From assembly GCA_001179505.1 (NCBI GenBank), contig CDMY01000632.1, positions 1-38,760 of the forward strand: a stretch of DNA of 38,760 nt. The letters are read 5' to 3'. Both the position numbers and the translations under genes were made by a program. The notes beneath the pieces are model-generated. The model was not told where the DNA came from. It worked only from the letters and a program-made list of their open reading frames with translations, and did no database searches. Positions within the stretch are counted from its first letter, which is position 1. Each line of letters starts with the position of its first letter. Positions 2,035 to 36,823 of this stretch are shown in pieces. This DNA comes from Vitrella brassicaformis CCMP3155. Its lineage: Eukaryota > Protista > Chromerida.

Positions 2035-3152
2035 ACTGAGGGGAGGGGAGGCAGCTGGGAGTGGAGTGATGGGTGCGAACATGTTTATGCGAGCGAGGTC
2101 CGTATTAGGACGGATCCATACACATAACATATACATGGCAGTTTGTTTAATGCTCATATATAATTATACCCCCATTCGTCGTGTCGCTCCCACCTGGCCC
2201 AGGTCTTTTTCCCTGGCTTCGTGATGACGACGTGACGTGACGGGGATGGTATGCGTATATACTCACGGACGTAATGATGGGCTGGATTGAGTTGCCTCAC
2301 CCCAAGCCGTGTTTCTCGTCGCTTCCTGCTTTCTGCTTTGTGGCTCTTGCACGCAGGACTTTTTTCCTGCCAGGCTGTGACGTGAGAGAGATTTGCATGA
2401 GTGAGTCGTGGAAGCACACGTGACGTGTGCGGTGGGTAGCTGGGGGCGAGTGTGTGAGTGGCCATGATTCGCTCACGGAATTCCGTTTGCTGTGGATATG
2501 TGCGTGTTCGAGTGAGTGGTGAGGAGTATATTATGTGGTTGGTCGCTTGGTGTGGCTTGAGAGCTGAATGAATGTGTGAAGGATCTAAGTCGGGGTGGGG
2601 GGACAAATCAATGGATGGACGGCACACAAACGAGAAAGATGGATGGAGGGAACAGGTGGTCGGGGAGGCAGGTTTTGATCGACGCATCGGTGTGCAAGCC
2701 TCGTTGCCGCTGCCTCTCTGCCGCCCTCTTGACGCTCGTCTCTTCTGCAATGCAGACACCCTTGACCTGCATTGCATGTGTACACATGTGTCTGCATTGC
2801 ATTGCATGCGTTGCATGTTTGCATCAAAGTGTAGACTTAATTGCATCTCGTTACCACTGAACGAATGGAATGGAATCAATCCCCTATGAGCTCCCAAAAG
2901 GGGATGACCTTAGTAGAAAAAGCTCTCGGATCGAGATCTGATTCATCCTTTCATTGCAAGTTGCACACCGTTGCAGTCGTCAGGTGGAGGCGGATGCAGT
3001 GGCGAGGCGTCATTCAGTCATATAGAGGAGAGTTTCCTCCTCCTTGCCCGGATCGTCTGCGAGCTACCACCAAATGGATCGCGATTCCTTCATGGACTGC
3101 TGAAGGACTCAGCCGACCAGTGGCGCTTTGCTGAGTCAATCGTACAGACAAG

Positions 3153-5491
3153 ATGCAGACGCAGCCGATCGGTAAGGAGGCTGGCAGGCAGGGAAGGCAG
3201 CAAGATGGATGGATAGATGGCTTTGCTTGACTCAGATGGTGACTTTTACGGCGATTTCGATGATGACGACCGGGCGTCGGAATTCTTCGGGCAAGAGGTG
3301 AGATGACCAACCACACATTCGCGTGATTTACTCCTGCTCGCTCATCCACTTGTCCGTATCTGCGTGTGTGTGTCAATCCACCAGGTCGGTCATCTTGTGT
3401 TGGAGGACACTGCTGCTCCCGACCCGCCTCGCTTCGCCATACGCAAGGGCGCCAACGACATCGGACGACGGCATCAGGAGGGGGTCAGCCAACACTGACT
3501 CTGCGCGCAACTGCCTGTGCGTGACTGACGTCTGTTCGTAGTTGTTCCCTGTGGATGGCCACCGTGTGGACCTGCTCGTGGAGGGCGACAGCAGTCTCAC
3601 CATCTCGAGGAAGCATGCAATCATACGTGAGTCAGCGAAGGGAGACCATCCAGGGATGCATCCATCCACGAGCGTGTACGTGTTTCTGTGCCCTTGGATG
3701 TTGAGCGTGACAGCATCGAGACCTGGGACGCCGGCAGCGGCAATGGCACATGGTAGGCCTGCCTGTAACACTCGCAGCCCGCAACGCAACGACCGTCTCT
3801 TGTGTTTTGTGCATTGTGATGTGCGGGTCTGCACGTGTTCAGCTTTGCGAACAGAGATAACAGAGAGAAGCCACTGAAGCTGGGCGTGCGATACGATCTG
3901 TCCGACGGCTGCATCATTCGATTTGGATGTGAGCGGGCGGACACTCCTCACCCCCCTCACTTACATCACGGATAACAACGTCGCTCTTCATGATTGTGCT
4001 CTTCCCTATCGCTGGCAGCCGTCCGCTTTCGCTTCGTCATGGTCCCAGCATTCAAGCAGTGGCTGGACAGTCGGCTGATGCCCTCCCCGCCACCCATGCC
4101 GCACCCACCCCCTCCTCCCGCCGCCAGTGGGGCTGTGTTCGAATTGGTGAGGCAACTCAATCGGGCAAGTGGAGAGGGGGCGGGGTAGGGCAGAAGACAA
4201 CGCATTTTTCGGTCTTTCCATCAGGAGCGTTTGAGGGCAGAGGATGCCTGTTCAACTGTTGCCCAGCTCACCGAGACCATTCGGTGCGAAAAGGTCGACT
4301 CCACTCATTCATCATCGCCTCTCATCCCCTTATGTGCAGGGTGAAGGACAGCGAGCTGCAGCGCCACGTGGCCGACAAGAAGGCCAACGCTGCCCTCCTC
4401 ACCGTCAAGGACAACACCATCACATCGCTCAAGCAGGACAACGCCGCACACCGCACCCGCATCGTCAAACTCGAGCAGCAGATCGCCACACTCGAGAGGG
4501 AGCGCCTCACCGACGAACGGCTGCGTCAGTGTGGGTCTGCAGCTGAGATTGAGTGCCTAATGGGACGGGCGGATGAGGAGATGGGGCGGCTGGCGGGCTT
4601 CAAGCGGCGTGCTGAGGCGCTGCACGACGAGAAGAGGAGGGAAGAGGAAGAGAGCGACCGCATGTGTCTCGCCTGCAAGGGGAGGGAGAAGACCGTCACA
4701 CTGCCGTGTGGTCAGTCAGCAAGAGAGACAGTATGATGACGTTGACCGACATGTGTGTGGACATGCGTGTGTGCAGGGCATGTGTGCTATTGCAGGGAGT
4801 GCTACCGGCGCATCCTCTTAGGCCCACCCGAGAGGCCAGCTGACGGCGATGGCAACGGCGATGATGAAGATGAGGAGATGGCCGAGGAGCCGGTGCCACC
4901 CAGGTGTTTCTGCAAAACACCATTCTAGTGAGTGCCGGCCATCCATGTGTTCATGGAGAGAAGATGCTATCATCAAGGGCGGTCGATGTGGTGTGATTTG
5001 TGTGCAGTGACGTGCTCCCTACGTTTAGCAATGATGGCGATTACGTCCTCACGCGACCGCCTCCACGGTAAGGGCATAAACTGTCTGTCTGTCACACAGG
5101 CATATGCACTAGACATGTGCGACGTGAGTACCATCCTCTCTCTCTCTCTCACTGTCACGTTGTTCTACTGCCGCAGAGGGGTGCGTACTGCCTACATGAG
5201 GGTGAGGATCAAGGAGTCACCCACAGGCCGGCAGGTCCCTCTGTGGGTGCGACGAGAATCCCTCGTGCTTCACGTCAAGGCGGCTTTGTACCACGACATC
5301 TCCAAAATACACCTGATCTTTGGCGGCAAGTACGTAAGGCCTTCACGCAGGCAGGCAGGCAGGGAGGGAGTGTGTGTGTGTGCGTGACTGATGTGCATCC
5401 CCCCTGCAGGACGATTTCGGACGAGTTATTGTTGGCGGAGTACGGCGTACTGGGGGGCAGCACCATCCACATGATCGTCACCAGATGGTGA
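3153..5491 (+). CDS. FHA + Pro-rich + coiled coil + RING-type zinc finger + C-terminal ubiquitin-like domain protein (~13 exons)
   Basis: Spliced reading: MQTQPI|DGDFYGDFDDDDRASEFFGQE|VGHLVLE..KGANDIGR..|..ISRKHAII..DAGSGNGT|..LKLGVRYDLSDGCIIRFG (FHA). Then a coiled coil (VKDSELQRH..KLEQQIATLERE), CLAC..LPC|GHVCYCREC..RCFCKTPF (RING-like), a linking exon 5008-5067, and MRVRIKESPTGRQVPLWV..HLIFGGK|TISDELLLAEYGVLGGSTIHMIVTRW* (UBL). The junction near 3627-3715 is unresolved; in-frame TGA upstream of ATG 3153. Confidence 0.8.
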
Positions 5492-7007
5492 GGGAGGGGC
5501 TGCTAGCTAGCTGAGAGGGAGGAATGAAGGATGGGGCGCAGTGCATGCCAAGCACGGCTAGACCGTCAATGGGTGTGTGTACACAGATATACAGACTGCC
5601 TGGATGCCTGCCATCGCACTGACTCGCTCCATGGCCGTGCTGCATTGCATGCGCGTCTCCTTTTGACTCGATGCATGTCGCTGTGCGGTGCGTGTCCATA
5701 CAGACAGACGTGAACGGCAGTGCATCGCCCGCGTACACACTGAGCATTTCATGTCTAATCCACAAACACATTCATTCTTGCGCCGGCTCGATGCATGATA
5801 ACAAACCGCAAAGGCGGCAGCAATCACGCCGCTGCGATGAGTCTAAATCACTTCGGGGTGACTTGTGGGTTAGGGTTCGTTTGGCCACCCTTTTCACGAA
5901 ATTGTGATTTCATTTCATCTCAATGCAATGAATCGACCGACTATTAAGCGTCTGGAGAGACTCGGTCAAGTGTGCGCTTGGTATCCGAGGCACCGACACT
6001 GATGGCTACAGACCGGCAAATTTGTTGCTGGATGCGGCGCAACAAATGCGATGCAATCACTCTTATCATTCGGTCGTGTTTGGGTGCTCGCTGCTTCCAG
6101 CTTCCGAGTGTCTATTCAGCGAGCGGGTCTAGTGGAGAATGGATGTGTGAAGTGACGAGGCGGATTGGCTTGGTGGCGATGATCTTCGCTGTGGTTGAGT
6201 GAGAGTGACCGATGATAAAGATATCAGTCGCTGTGAACGTCCGTACACACACACTGATAATAGAAAGGACTGTCCGATGGTCAAACAAGCACGAAAGGGG
6301 GAAACGAAGCAACACACAGAGGTCAACCAGTCGGAATAAGGAAGGCGCAAGCGCAAGAAAAAGACAGAGAGACCGTTGCCACTGGGCTGTCTTCAACGGT
6401 CTCTCCTCCCCTGTCTACTCCCGTCCTGTCTCCTCAAGTTTACAAGACGCGGCTAAGCTCGCAGGAGTGGCCTCGCAGCGTCTCATTCATATGCATGAGC
6501 ACATACACATACACGAATCATACAGACCCAGAGGAGTGAAGGCAGACAGTGCACCCCAGAAGCAACCCAAAAAGTGCTCGTGCGCTGATGAAGTGACGAA
6601 TCACCGGCGATGAGGGATCTTCCCTCCCTTCATCAGCGCAGCGATATACACCACAACATGCACGCAAGGCACCACTTTCCTCATGACAGACTCATCATTG
6701 ATGTGTCATTTCTTGCACCCTGCAACAGTCGTCAAGGTTTGGGTATTTACGCAGGTGAGCCGAAGGCGCGAGTGCGGACGCTTTCACGCCGGCACCACAG
6801 CGGCCCACCCGATACGGTACACGTACTTTGCAGATCCAAACACCAAAAGAGCCGAGGCGCGACAGGGATATGCAGCCAGGCCAACAACAGCACTCGTGAC
6901 TGGCCCATCACGCCTGACGCAGGGCAGCACTACGAAGTGCATCCGCCTACGCTTCACAAAGCCAGACGGTCACCGGTGCATCTCTGTCCGCTCCGCGCAT
7001 CTACCTC

Positions 7008-12610: not shown

Positions 12611-15427
12611 ATGGATTGGCTGAATGATTACGGCGACGAGGGCGAGGGCAAGGACAACGGCAGGAAGGAGCAGCCAGCGGCGGAGGAGCCTTCTGCTGCA
12701 CCCGCCGCGGCTCCCGCTCCGTCAGCTCCTTCGCTGGCGGTTGTGAACGTGGCTCCTGATGTGGACACACACGAGGAGGAGAGGGTGGCCATGCACGACC
12801 CTAACGCCAAGCAGATCTACACCAATCCCACAGCCGAGTCGCTGTTCGCGCCGCTACAGGGACCTGTGCACCCGTACAAGGTGAGTCGCCGTGAGAGAAG
12901 TGTTCCTGTCTGCATCACACGCCTGCGTGTGATGTCGTGTGATGTGATGTGATACGTGTCAGGTGGACCAGTTGTATGCGGGTCATCGCAACCACCTGAC
13001 GGGTCACCTGGAGGCGCACAACCTGCCCCACTTCGCATTCCACAGGGAGTACCACACCTTCCACAGCGTCGGTGCCGCAGCCGACCCGTCGGACTACAGC
13101 ATACCGGGGGTGAGGGAGGGGACGGAGGCGATAGGGGTGTACACAGATGCAGCCAGAACTTGCTATGTGTGTGTCGTGTCCCGTTGGCAGAAGCGTCGTG
13201 TGGGTGCCATGGAGGAGCCGACAGAGGGACCCACCAACATGTATGTATGCACCGACAGACACACCGCAGACACGGAAAATGTCACCTGTACTTGCTGGTT
13301 TCAGTTTCGAGAAGGCTCAGCGGAAGGACAGCCGCAAGCGTGTCAAGAACAGCGACCCAGCGTCGGACGACTGTAAGACAAAGAAGCACGCAGGAACCGA
13401 GACAGATCGACCAGAAAAGTCCATGTATGTGTGTTCTTGTGATGTCATGCAGACTTGGGTCCCTGGGCGCCATTCGTGGGGGAGGCGGAGAGAAGGTAAA
13501 GGCACACGCGCACACCAAACGGTGGTCCAGTCCATGGCAGTTAGCCATTGTGCCGGTTGCTGTTGTCTGTATGTTTGTCCATGTAGGGAGGAGTTGATGA
13601 GGGAGGCGGAGGAGAATAAGCAGACGGTGGCTGAGATAGAGGCCGCGGCGGCCGCCTCTCGCCGCGAGAACCTCCCCGAGCCGCCGTCGGAGAGCAGCGA
13701 CAAGGGCGGGGAGCGTGTGACGTCGATCTTCCACGGCAAGTCCGAGAGGGACTACCAGGGCAGGTCGTGGATCGACCCCAAGGGCGACCAGACCATCGAA
13801 CGATCGGGGGACAAGGCCAACTACATACCCAAACAGTAAGTAGACAGACACAGAGAGGGAGGGAGGGAGGGAGGGGAACAAAGGAAAAAGTAGATGGACG
13901 AAAATGCGTGTCATGCTTTGGTTGCAGGTGCATCTACACCTACACAGGTCACACGGCGGGCGTGAATACCGTTCGGTTCTTCCCGAAGACTGGTTGGTGT
14001 ACCGTACACAAAATGAATGATGGACACTCACTCAGACAGGTCGACGCACGCCTACACTAACGTGTGGTGTGCCTGCGTGTGTTTGGATGTGCTGTGCAGG
14101 TCATCTGATGATGTCGGCCAGTATGGACACCAAGATCAAGATCTGGGACGTCTACAACCAGAGGAAGTGAGCAGTCACACACACACAACACTCACACGCA
14201 CACGCACGTGTGTGTGTGTCATGTACCCATTCGTCTCCCTCCCGTTTTGGGTATGGCATGTGTGTGTGTGTGTAGGTGCATCCGCACGTACACGGGTCAC
14301 GACAAGGCCGTGCGTGACATCCAGTTTACCAACGACGGCAGGAGGTTCTACAGGTGCGTGAAGTGCCACCATGCCATACCGACAACAAACACACCTGCAC
14401 ATCTGTCTGTCTGTCTGTCTATGGTGTGTTCAGCTGTTCGTACGACCGCAACATCAACCTGTGGGACACTGAGACGGGCAAAATCATAGGCACATTCACC
14501 AACGGCAAGGTACGGTACGCACACAAGAGAGCTGCGGACGGACATGCATAGCGAGAGACATGTGTGTTGTGAATGTGTGTGTGGGTGTGTGCAGACGCCG
14601 TATTGCGTGACGATCCACCCTGACGACGACAAGCAGAATGTGTTCTTGATCGGGTCGTCCGACAAGAAGGCCGTCCAGTTCGACGCAGACACGGGCCAGA
14701 TCACACAGGAGTACAACGAACACCTGGGGGCCGTCAACACGGTACGCCACGCATGCCTACGGAGACATCAGAGGCATGTCCATGTGCGGCATATGTGTTC
14801 ATGTGCGTGTGTGCAGGTCACGTTTGTCGATGACAACAATCTGCTGGTGACCACCTCTGACGACAAGAAGCTCTTCGTGTGGGAGTTCGGGATACCGGTG
14901 GTCGTCAAGGTGAGTAACCGTACAAGGGAGGCGAGGCTCAAGGGGGTGCTGGTGCATGGCACGAATGTTGTGTGTGTGCCCATCCCATTGCATTGCTGCA
15001 GCACATAGCTGAGCCGTTTATGCAGTCGATGCCCGCCGTCAAGGTCCACCCAAGCAAGCGATACCTTGCCTGCCAATCCATGGACAACCAGGTACGGTGG
15101 ACCACAAGACCCCCCCCCCCCCCCCCNNNNNNNNNNNNNNNNNNNNNNNNNNNNNNNNNNNNNNNNNNNNNNNNNNNNNNNNNNNNNNNNNNNNNNNNNN
15201 NNNNNNNNNNNNNNNNNNNNNNNNNNNNNNNNNNNNNNNNNNNNNNNNNNNNNNNNNNNNNNNNNNNNNNNNNNNNNNNNNNNNNNNNNNNNNNNNNNNN
15301 NNNNNNNNNNNNNNNNNNNNNNNNNNNNNNNNNNNNNNNNNNNNNNNNNNNNNNNNNNNNNNNNNNNNNNNNNNNNNNNNNNNNNNNNNNNNNNNNNNNN
15401 NNNNNNNNNNNNNNNNNNNNNNNNNNA

Positions 15428-36523: not shown

Positions 36524-36823
36524 NNNNNNNNNNNNNNNNNNNNNNNNNNNNNNNNNNNNNNNNNNNNNNNNNNNNNNNNNNNNNNNNNNNNNNNNNNNNN
36601 NNNNNNNNNNNNNNNNNNNNNNNNNNNNNNNNNNNNNNNNNNNNNNNNNNNNNNNNNNNNNNNNNNNNNNNNNNNNNNNNNNNNNNNNNNNNNNNNNNNN
36701 NNNNNNNNNNNNNNNNNNNNNNNNNNNNNNNNNNNNNNNNNNNNNNNNNNNNNNNNNNNNNNNNNNNNNNNNNNNNNNNNNNNNNNNNNNNNNNNNNNNN
36801 NNNNNNNNNNNNNNNNNNNNNNN
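36524..36823. other. Assembly gap (300 N) flanked by poly-G runs
   Basis: Run of N between G homopolymers, in intergenic sequence. Confidence 0.99.

What the first reader, a model, noticed from the sequence alone, without database searches (positions are those of the whole stretch)
3153..5491. Single protein with FHA - coiled coil - RING - ubiquitin-like architecture
Seen: hand-splicing joins an FHA domain, a Pro-rich linker, a long coiled coil, a RING-type finger and, via a 60-nt exon (5008-5067) that bypasses the TAG at 4926-4928, a C-terminal UBL without a di-Gly end. Established: FHA+RING E3 ligases (RNF8, CHFR, yeast Dma1/2) read phospho-Thr and ubiquitinate targets in DNA-damage and mitotic checkpoints, and they carry no terminal UBL. 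Inference: a possibly undescribed phospho-dependent E3 with a built-in UBL for proteasome, p97 or E2 engagement, or for autoinhibition. Skipping the splice at 4928 would give a UBL-less isoform.
Basis: partly seen in the sequence, partly recalled or inferred. Interest (0 to 1): 0.72.

Follow-up and report, generated by a model that had tools for sequence, protein, structure and literature searches.

The report
Mosaic FHA–RING–ubiquitin-like gene in Vitrella
The alga Vitrella brassicaformis has an expressed, already annotated gene pieced together from three sources (FHA module, coiled-coil RING core, ubiquitin-like tail); its RING-to-ubiquitin-like splice is real, but every assembled transcript breaks the FHA reading frame, so the four-domain ligase may rarely or never be made.

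Summary
The window is a whole scaffold of Vitrella brassicaformis CCMP3155. On that model Pfam finds FHA, RING (zf-C3HC4_3) and ubiquitin, all above their cut-offs. Spliced RNA contigs confirm 4927/5008, 5067/5177 and 5329/5410, so RING and UBL lie on one transcript and the TAG is spliced out.

Three points weaken the "new phospho-dependent E3" reading:
- **FHA frame.** Every transcript assembly seen splices at 3626/3714. The model needs 3630/3714, the +5 GT of a perfect GTGAGT donor. With the observed joint the ORF from ATG 3153 stops after 112 codons, and FHA no longer passes Pfam.
- **RING.** The last zinc pair is C-x-C. All six relatives compared have C-x2-C.
- **Origin.** The gene is a mosaic. 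Only residues 169-367 match a Vitrella-only coiled-coil RING family. The UBL exons sit in a ~655-nt insert in the former 3' UTR, and splice from a GTGAGT that overlaps the ancestral stop codon.

Verdict: real and expressed, probably a young gene, with doubtful output. I found no other FHA+RING+UBL protein, but FHA+RING and UBL+RING are each known. The scan noted another RING-ubiquitin fusion elsewhere in this genome (s1-215901), not this gene.

The parts
3103..3171 (+). Exon 1: 5' UTR and start codon ATG 3153
   Evidence: L003 1-69 is identical to the window. P0009 starts MQTQPI.
3236..3297 (+). Exon 2: acidic N-terminal stretch
   Evidence: L003 alignment; P0009 residues 7-27.
3385..3483 (+). 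Exon 3: first part of the FHA, with Gly54-Arg55; donor GTCAGC at 3484
   Evidence: L003 alignment; motif positions.
3542..3626 (+). Exon 4 as seen in RNA (FHA Ser82..His85). The public model extends it to 3630.
   Evidence: Joint 3626>3714 in X1 and X6 and in L003 and L004. The model with 3630 equals P0009.
3627..3636 (+). Tandem donor GTGAGTCAGC. The first GT (3627) is the one used in transcripts. The second GT (3631) is needed for an in-frame FHA.
3714..3752 (+). Exon 5: FHA GSGNGT motif (Asn100)
3843..3928 (+). Exon 6: end of the FHA. In the observed mRNA the ORF from ATG 3153 stops here at TGA 3875-3877.
4019..4146 (+). Exon 7: Pro-rich linker. Homology to the paralogue family begins inside this exon at about 4129 (GAVFEL).
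4225..4283 (+). Exon 8: start of the helical / coiled-coil region
4340..4710 (+). Exon 9: coiled-coil region and first half of the RING (C303, C306, C317, start of Gly318)
4777..4927 (+). Exon 10: second half of the RING (H319, C323, C326), an acidic insert, and the last pair C361-F-C363 at 4905-4913
4926..4933 (+). TAG stop (4926-4928) overlapping the donor GTGAGT (4928-4933). Paralogues have TCG TGA GT here.
4957..5611 (+). Insert of about 655 nt that is absent from paralogue P0014 (L006) and from L002. It carries an acceptor, three exons, the stop codon and part of the 3' UTR.
5008..5067 (+). Exon 11: 60-nt linker exon
5177..5329 (+). Exon 12: first two thirds of the ubiquitin-like domain
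5410..5756 (+). Exon 13: end of the UBL (to 5488), stop TGA 5489-5491, and 3' UTR. From 5629 (blastn; 5662 against L006) to 5808 the sequence is again homologous to the paralogue's 3' UTR.

Best explanation
This is an expressed mosaic gene of Vitrella brassicaformis, probably young, and it is already in the public annotation as CEM27199.1.

Shown:
- Its middle part (residues 169-367, coiled coil plus C-terminal RING) is a copy of a Vitrella-only gene family.
- Two annotated members of that family, including the closest, carry an N-terminal UBL. None carries an FHA.
- The 5' part (FHA plus Pro-rich linker) has no counterpart in the paralogues. The join lies inside an exon at about 4129.
- The 3' part came in as an insert of about 655 nt in the former 3' UTR. 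It supplies a splice acceptor and three exons.
- The GTGAGT that already overlapped the ancestral stop codon is used as the donor, so the RING exon splices to a linker and a ubiquitin-like domain without Gly-Gly.
- All assembled transcripts cut exon 4 at the first GT of GTGAGTCAGC (3627). That puts the two halves of the FHA in different frames and ends translation after 112 codons.
- Eight AUGs precede the next in-frame Met (Met139).

Inferred:
- The main mRNA is unproductive for the RING and UBL.
- The four-domain protein can come only from a minor splice form that uses the GT at 3631.
- Together with the shortened last zinc pair (C-x-C), this points to a recently assembled gene under relaxed constraint. 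It is either on its way out or kept at a very low level by unproductive splicing.
- If the full protein is made, it would act like RNF8 or CHFR: a coiled-coil RING E3 aimed at phospho-Thr targets by the FHA. The UBL, which keeps the Ile44-type patch (LIFGGK) and H-M-I for H68-L69-V70, would be a docking or self-regulating handle.
For: Gene model and identity:
- P0009 is CEM27199.1 / A0A0G4GD61, on a contig of 38760 nt.
- The joined exons are identical to P0009.
- Pfam finds the three domains.

RING-UBL transcript:
- The RNA contigs X1 rec5 and X6 rec25 carry joints 4709/4710>4776/4777, 4927>5008, 5066/5067>5176/5177 and 5329>5410.
- L003 and L004 agree.

Frame break:
- Joint 3626>3714 is seen in X1, X6, L003 and L004.
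- The resulting ORF is 112 aa, with its stop at 3875-3877.
- On the transcript's own reading frames, FHA is absent or reduced to a half (E 0.08).
- Eight AUGs lie upstream of Met139.
- No transcript-derived full-length protein is in the 15-billion-sequence collection. The cluster holds only P0003, P0009 and P0010.

Mosaic origin:
- P0009 and P0014 align only over residues 169-367 against 249-464.
- The DNA homology blocks are 4129-4234, 4255-4941 and 5662-5808.
- The breakpoints are mapped.
- L002 also lacks the UBL block.

Family:
- P0004, P0011, P0014, P0007 and P0015 are all from Vitrella.
- P0014 and P0011 have an N-terminal UBL.
- The paralogue transcript runs unspliced through the latent donor.

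RING and selection:
- C-x-C in the window against C-x2-C in six relatives.
- dN/dS is 0.33-0.59. Introns 7 and 8 are more alike than the exons between the window and L002.
Against: - The spliced ORF stays open for 447 codons across nine introns, and the UBL exons are open and in frame. This argues for selection or a very recent origin, not for long decay.
- The FHA keeps Gly-Arg, Ser-x-x-His and Asn-Gly in one frame if the GT at 3631 is used.
- GTCAGY donors do work elsewhere in this gene (3484 and 4711), so a productive minor isoform is plausible.
- All the RNA evidence is assembled contigs, which drop rare variants. Five joints were not listed.
- L003 and L004 may come from the same libraries as X1 or X6.
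- The direction of the 655-nt difference (insertion here, or deletion in the relatives) rests on parsimony. The tree does not resolve the order.
Confidence: 0.6

Rival explanations
1. A working FHA-coiled coil-RING-UBL ligase. The public model is the real product, made from a splice form that uses the GT at 3631. It reads phospho-Thr and ubiquitinates targets. The UBL engages the proteasome, p97 or an E2, or autoinhibits. The choice between donors 4 nt apart could set its level.
For: - All three Pfam domains pass their cut-offs on P0009.
- The FHA ligand-binding residues G54-R55, S82..H85 and N100 are present.
- The ORF is long and open.
- The Atlas's nearest clusters are RNF8 and CHFR.
- The UBL aligns with ubiquitin residues 7-71 and keeps the I44 and K48 equivalents.
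- GTCAGC is a used donor at 3484.
Against: - No assembled transcript has the 3630/3714 joint.
- The GT at 3631 is the +5 GT of a perfect GTGAGT. In human data only 0.7% of such delta-4 tandem donors are confirmed alternative (PMC2878309).
- The last RING pair is C-x-C.
- No orthologue or second protein with this architecture was found.
Confidence: 0.25
2. The main mRNA makes a 327-residue coiled coil-RING-UBL protein from Met139. The FHA exons serve only as a long leader.
For: The ORF from the AUG at L003 461 is 327 aa and holds the RING and the UBL.
Against: - Eight AUGs come before it, the first in a good context (A at -3) with a 112-codon ORF. Reinitiation after an ORF that long is unlikely on established knowledge of scanning.
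- Half an FHA lies in frame upstream of Met139, which makes no sense as a leader.
Confidence: 0.1
3. The UBL is a separate gene with its own start (ATG about 5197), and the RING protein ends at TAG 4928.
For: An ATG opens the UBL (MRVRIK, residue 395). The TAG at 4926-4928 would end a canonical family-type protein.
Against: - Single RNA contigs run from the RING exon through the 60-nt exon into both UBL exons (X1 rec5 and X6 rec25; L003).
- No unspliced form of this copy was seen at 4927.
- The contig that reads through there belongs to paralogue P0014.
Confidence: 0.03

Closest known systems
RNF8 (also CHFR, and yeast Dma1/Dma2): FHA + RING E3 ligases
   Same: N-terminal FHA and a RING further on, as in the Atlas clusters named RNF8 and CHFR, which carry the FHA and RING Pfam families and are the nearest by features (0.83-0.85). 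That RNF8 places a helical/coiled-coil middle between FHA and a C-terminal RING, and that this RING is of the C3HC4 type, is from my own knowledge. RNF8's FHA binds phospho-sites on MDC1 (PMC3705210).
   Different: There is no sequence kinship beyond the domains. The coiled coil-RING core belongs to a Vitrella-only family whose other members have no FHA. This gene has an extra C-terminal UBL. Its last Cys pair is C-x-C. Its FHA is out of frame in the assembled transcripts.
Vitrella paralogues P0014 and P0011 (CEM19669.1): UBL - middle domain - coiled coil - RING
   Same: 75% identity with P0014 over the coiled coil and RING. They share the acidic insert in the RING. Both combine a ubiquitin-family domain with this RING.
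   Different: In the paralogues the UBL is N-terminal and unrelated in sequence to the one here. They end C-x2-C-[RN]-K-P-F plus stop, and they have no FHA.
PRC1 RING1B / BMI1 (RING + C-terminal RAWUL ubiquitin-like domain); parkin and UHRF1 (UBL + RING-type ligases)
   Same: A RING ligase with a non-conjugatable ubiquitin-fold domain in the same chain. RAWUL is C-terminal to the RING (PMC2447854). Atlas clusters that carry both ubiquitin and RING Pfam families exist in fungi and oomycetes.
   Different: None of these has an FHA. RAWUL is a divergent fold family, whereas the UBL here matches ubiquitin and NEDD8 directly. The parkin and UHRF1 domain order (UBL N-terminal) is from my own knowledge.

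Membership tests
FHA domain (PF00498) | Profile match above Pfam's gathering score | tested here: met
   P0009 scores 25.6 bits and P0009:1-140 scores 28.4 bits, against a cut-off of 20.7, covering profile positions 3-67 of 67. This holds only for the annotated junction 3630/3714.
FHA domain (PF00498) | Conserved Gly-Arg, Ser-x-x-His and Asn-Gly of the phosphopeptide site | tested here: met
   G54-R55, S82-R-K-H85 and N100-G101 in P0009. That these are the defining residues is from established knowledge.
FHA domain (PF00498) | The domain is encoded in one frame by the mRNA actually seen | tested here: not met
   Joint 3626>3714 in X1, X6, L003 and L004. The 112-aa ORF has no Pfam match. The long ORF matches only profile positions 33-67, at E 0.08.
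RING finger, C3HC4 (PF13920 zf-C3HC4_3) | Profile match above the gathering score | tested here: met
   30.8-33 bits against a cut-off of 27, but only profile positions 2-33 of 49 are matched.
RING finger, C3HC4 (PF13920 zf-C3HC4_3) | Eight zinc ligands with a final C-x2-C pair | tested here: not met
   The ligands are C303-x2-C306, C317-x-H319 and C323-x2-C326, then C361-F-C363. P0004, P0007, P0011, P0014, L001 and L002 all have C-x2-C.
RING finger, C3HC4 (PF13920 zf-C3HC4_3) | E2-dependent ubiquitin transfer | not testable with these tools
   Needs an in vitro assay.
Ubiquitin family (PF00240) | Profile match above the gathering score and alignment to ubiquitin | tested here: met
   32.5-37 bits against a cut-off of 25.4, covering profile positions 6-70 of 72. 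phmmer to PDB gives NEDD8 at E 6e-4 and ubiquitin chains down to 1e-6 and below, aligned to ubiquitin residues 7-71.
Ubiquitin family (PF00240) | C-terminal Gly-Gly, needed for conjugation | tested here: not met
   The protein ends ...HMIVTRW followed by the stop at 5489-5491. It is a UBL domain, not a modifier.
RNF8 / CHFR family | Sequence kinship beyond shared domains (orthology) | tested here: not met
   HMMER against 1.84 billion representatives with the coiled coil-RING exon found only Vitrella-type relatives. The word search with P0009 found 3 proteins, all Vitrella. The Atlas likeness of 0.83-0.85 is a lead only.

The most novel reading that the evidence does not exclude
A minor splice form that uses the GT at 3631 yields a true FHA-coiled coil-RING-UBL ligase. 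This would be a domain combination found nowhere else in my searches. The 4-nt choice between the two GTs of one donor would act as an on/off switch (unproductive against productive splicing) for a phospho-dependent E3 with a built-in ubiquitin-like handle.
Probability: 0.2. Interest if true: 0.55.

Novelty: new variant of a known kind. Interest (0 to 1): 0.35.

Why it matters
If the full protein is made, it would be the first FHA-RING ligase with a ubiquitin-like tail that I could find. It could be used to ask what a cis-linked UBL does to an RNF8-type enzyme.

As it stands, its clearest value is as a dated example of how new multi-domain genes arise:
- A stop codon that sits inside a latent splice donor.
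- A ~655-nt insert that brings an acceptor and three ready-made exons.
- An in-exon fusion to a foreign 5' module.
- A perfect GTGAGT donor whose first GT breaks the frame.

It is also a warning that the public gene model rests on a splice junction that no assembled transcript supports.

Tried and rejected
- **Pfam exon by exon, by reference.** Only the last exon gave a weak ubiquitin match (E 0.003). The domains are split over exons, so this route is nearly blind.
- **Joined model.** I sent no typed joined model to any search tool. I used the database protein P0009 and the transcript contig L003 by reference. Exons were joined only inside scripts, to read frames and to check identity with P0009.
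- **Rfam on the window.** No match.
- **phmmer of the FHA region against PDB sequences.** No match.
- **phmmer of UBL exon 12 alone.** No match.
- **AlphaFold2 without an alignment.** Residues 290-465 gave pLDDT 44 and residues 20-145 gave pLDDT 54. Both are too poor to use, and the Foldseek hits on the second (cupins, CBMs) are meaningless.
- **Source genes of the UBL and FHA blocks.** The word search with residues 368-465 was blank. JGI metagenome scans with residues 1-168 and 368-465 were blank. These are limited by query length and by what the collections hold, so they do not show absence.
- **A 37-nt intron (3674-3705) giving a longer FHA hairpin.** Rejected by the RNA joint 3626>3714.
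- **Start at ATG 3217.** Rejected. The transcript skips 3172-3235.
- **Order of duplication and speciation.** The tree leaves a trichotomy.
Full report
**What the window is.** The window is a eukaryotic scaffold, 57% G+C, with short GT..AG introns. An exact look-up shows the 465-aa protein P0009 = CEM27199.1 / UniProt A0A0G4GD61, named "Ubiquitin-like domain-containing protein", from Vitrella brassicaformis CCMP3155. It lies on a contig of 38760 nt, which is the window's own length. Joining the exons in a script reproduces P0009 letter for letter. My literature searches found no paper that describes it.

**Check of the observation.** I first searched the model exon by exon, by reference. Only the last exon matched ubiquitin weakly (Pfam E 0.003; PDB ubiquitin/NEDD8 residues 50-72). 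On the database protein P0009 Pfam finds three domains:

| Domain | Residues | Bits | Cut-off |
|---|---|---|---|
| FHA | 53-131 | 25.6 (28.4 for the N-terminal part alone) | 20.7 |
| zf-C3HC4_3 | 300-330 | 30.8 | 27 |
| ubiquitin | 403-463 | 32.5 (37 alone) | 25.4 |

- The UBL aligns with ubiquitin residues 7-71. It keeps the L-I-F-x-G-K stretch (the Ile44 and Lys48 equivalents) and ends at TRW without Gly-Gly.
- The region between FHA and RING gives only weak hits to coiled-coil families. I ran no coiled-coil predictor.

**RNA evidence for the RING-UBL link.**
- Two of the public runs that hold this stretch (X1 and X6, from different studies) behave as RNA. Their contigs skip GT..AG intervals that the DNA runs X2 and X3 cover without a break.
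- One contig in each run goes from the RING exon through 4927>5008, 5067>5177 and 5329>5410 into the 3' UTR.
- Two JGI transcript contigs, L003 (1709 nt) and L004, give the whole exon chain from 3103 to 5756.
- RING and UBL are therefore on one transcript. The TAG at 4926-4928 is removed because its G is the first base of the donor GTGAGT.
- A separate UBL gene is not supported.
- L004 and its product P0010 retain the last intron and would truncate the UBL.
- These assemblies may share libraries. At least two studies are involved.

**The frame problem in the FHA.**
- All four transcript assemblies end exon 4 at 3626 and resume at 3714. The public model ends it at 3630.
- The sequence there is ATAC|GTGA|GTCAGC. 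The used site is a perfect GTGAGT, and the model's site is the GT at its positions +5/+6.
- With the observed joint the Ser-Arg-Lys-His strand and the Gly-Ser-Gly-Asn-Gly-Thr loop fall in different frames.
- The ORF from ATG 3153 ends after 112 codons, at TGA 3875-3877.
- Neither frame of the transcript gives a passing FHA match: no match for the 112-aa ORF, and E 0.08 for the C-terminal half in the long ORF.
- The long ORF (447 open codons) has its first Met at residue 139 of P0009, behind eight other AUGs.
- The 90% cluster of this protein holds no transcript-derived full-length member.
- In human data, delta-4 tandem donors are very common by sequence, because the consensus itself contains the second GT. 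Only 0.7% of them are confirmed alternative (TassDB2, PMC2878309).
- On the other side, GTCAGC and GTCAGT are real donors in this same gene (3484 and 4711). Contigs drop rare forms, and five joints were not listed. A minor productive isoform therefore cannot be excluded.
- Inference: an Arg codon CGT followed by GA|GT makes a GTGAGT by itself, so one base change could have created the stronger upstream site.

**The RING.**
- The ligands read C303-x2-C306-x10-C317-x-H319-x3-C323-x2-C326-x34-C361-x-C363.
- Every relative I could compare has C-x2-C followed by [RN]-K-[PT]-F at the end: P0004, P0007, P0011, P0014 and the contigs L001 and L002.
- The window's copy is three bases shorter there. The DNA and RNA contigs agree with the window.
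- The final C-x2-C is part of the RING definition, so that feature is not met. Whether the finger still binds zinc and an E2 is untested.

**Where the gene came from.**
- HMMER over 1.84 billion representatives with the coiled coil-RING exon found only eight proteins. Six are Vitrella-type relatives and one is the window's own product: P0009/P0003, P0004, P0005/P0011, P0007 and three metagenome ORFs, P0001, P0002 and P0006 (P0006 resembles P0005/P0011). The eighth, P0008, is a weak tick protein.
- The word search with P0009 added P0014 and P0015.
- P0014, the closest, is 465 aa: N-terminal UBL, a middle domain, coiled coil, then a RING ending GPRCGLCRKPFS.
- P0011 has the same order.
- P0007 starts with a C2H2 finger.
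- P0015 reads past the family's usual end into a long tail.
- P0009 and P0014 align only over residues 169-367 against 249-464, at 75% identity.
- At the DNA level the P0014 locus (L006, same genome) matches window 4129-4234, 4255-4941 and 5662-5808 and nothing else.
- The 5' limit lies inside exon 7, at the codons for GAVFEL.
- At the 3' side the paralogue and the metagenome contig L002 run straight from ...CATGTGTTCATGA into CCATCGCAC.... The window has about 655 nt between these two strings, roughly 4957-5611. This stretch holds the acceptor at 5007, the 60-nt exon, both UBL exons, the stop and some 3' UTR.
- In L006 and L002 the stop is TCG TGA GT, so the GTGAGT was already there.
- The paralogue's transcript is in the RNA runs, matching 16/16 and 6/6 variant letters, and it runs through that site unspliced.
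- The UBL here is unrelated in sequence to the N-terminal UBLs of P0014 and P0011.
- I could not find the source genes of the FHA and UBL blocks.
- The core tree leaves window, L006 and L002 as a trichotomy, so the age relative to the split from the metagenome relative is open.
- dN/dS against relatives is 0.33-0.59. Against L002, introns 7 and 8 are more alike (96-97%) than the exons (89-93%). This indicates weak or diversifying constraint, on small numbers.

**How it most likely works.**
- Shown: the gene is transcribed and spliced at twelve introns, and RING and UBL are joined in the mRNA.
- Shown: the main mRNA cannot give the four-domain protein.
- Inferred: the main mRNA is unproductive.
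- Inferred: if a minor form uses 3631, the product would be an RNF8/CHFR-like coiled-coil RING ligase. Its FHA would aim it at phospho-Thr sites, and the UBL would serve as a docking or self-regulating handle.
- I put the "young mosaic gene with mainly unproductive output" reading at 0.6 and the fully working ligase at 0.25. A Met139-initiated coiled coil-RING-UBL protein is at 0.1, and a separate UBL gene at 0.03.

**Comparison with what is known.**
- By architecture the nearest are RNF8, CHFR and Dma1/2. The Atlas feature search returns RNF8 and CHFR clusters at 0.83-0.85 and no cluster carrying FHA, RING and ubiquitin together.
- RING plus a ubiquitin fold in one chain is known. PRC1 RING1B/BMI1 have a C-terminal RAWUL domain (PMC2447854). 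Parkin and UHRF1 have an N-terminal UBL (my own knowledge). Atlas clusters with ubiquitin plus RING families exist in fungi and oomycetes.
- The scan noted another RING-ubiquitin fusion elsewhere in this genome (s1-215901, not tested here).
- The triple combination was not found anywhere else, but I could not query a domain-architecture database.
- The gene is not a member of the RNF8/CHFR family by descent. It works, at most, like one.

**Verdict.**
- Observation: confirmed.
- Interpretation: partly supported.
- Novelty: a new variant of known kinds, restricted to one species, already in the annotation but undescribed.
- Function: in doubt.
- Interest: 0.35, mainly as a clean case of gene birth by exon capture and as a correction to the public model.

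Noticed in passing
L006:5040-5200 (P0014 locus, same genome): The annotated paralogue model needs two GC..AG introns (donors CAG|GCAAGT and CAG|GCAAGC). In the window's copy a T>G change made a new GT donor (TTG|GTGAGG at 4147), 18 nt upstream of the first of these. The two following exons are fused by deletions.
   Followed up: partly
P0015 (JGI transcript) and L001:780-900: Another family member has lost the stop after the RING (a 12-nt gap where the others have the stop and GTGAGT). It reads on into a tail of about 270 residues with two copies of a repeat of about 90 residues that has no Pfam match. This is a second, independent C-terminal extension in the family.
   Followed up: partly
window 6029-6400: DNA contig depth is 10-18 times the neighbouring level in X2 and X3, and RNA depth is also high. 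This is probably a dispersed repeat or mobile element. No second copy lies inside the window.
   Followed up: partly
window 5330-5409 (last intron): GGCA and GT microsatellites give very high depth and many loose ends in all runs. This intron is retained in transcript L004 / protein P0010.
   Followed up: partly
window 4284-4339 and 4711-4776: Introns 7 and 8 are 96-97% identical to the metagenome contig L002, while the flanking coding exons are 89-93% identical. This is the reverse of the usual pattern. Possible causes are gene conversion or fast protein evolution.
   Followed up: no
window 2600-2873: A strongly expressed neighbouring transcript ends at about 2873 (X1 record 1, 1380 nt). It sets the upstream limit of this gene.
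   Followed up: no
window 15127-15426 and 36524-36823: Two runs of 300 N each (scaffold gaps).
   Followed up: no
L001, L002 (ENA metagenome assembly ERZ893784): An environmental metagenome holds contigs of a Vitrella-like organism. L002 is syntenic with the P0014 locus over 3.6 kb at 85-93% identity. This is a possible source of comparative data for chromerids.
   Followed up: partly
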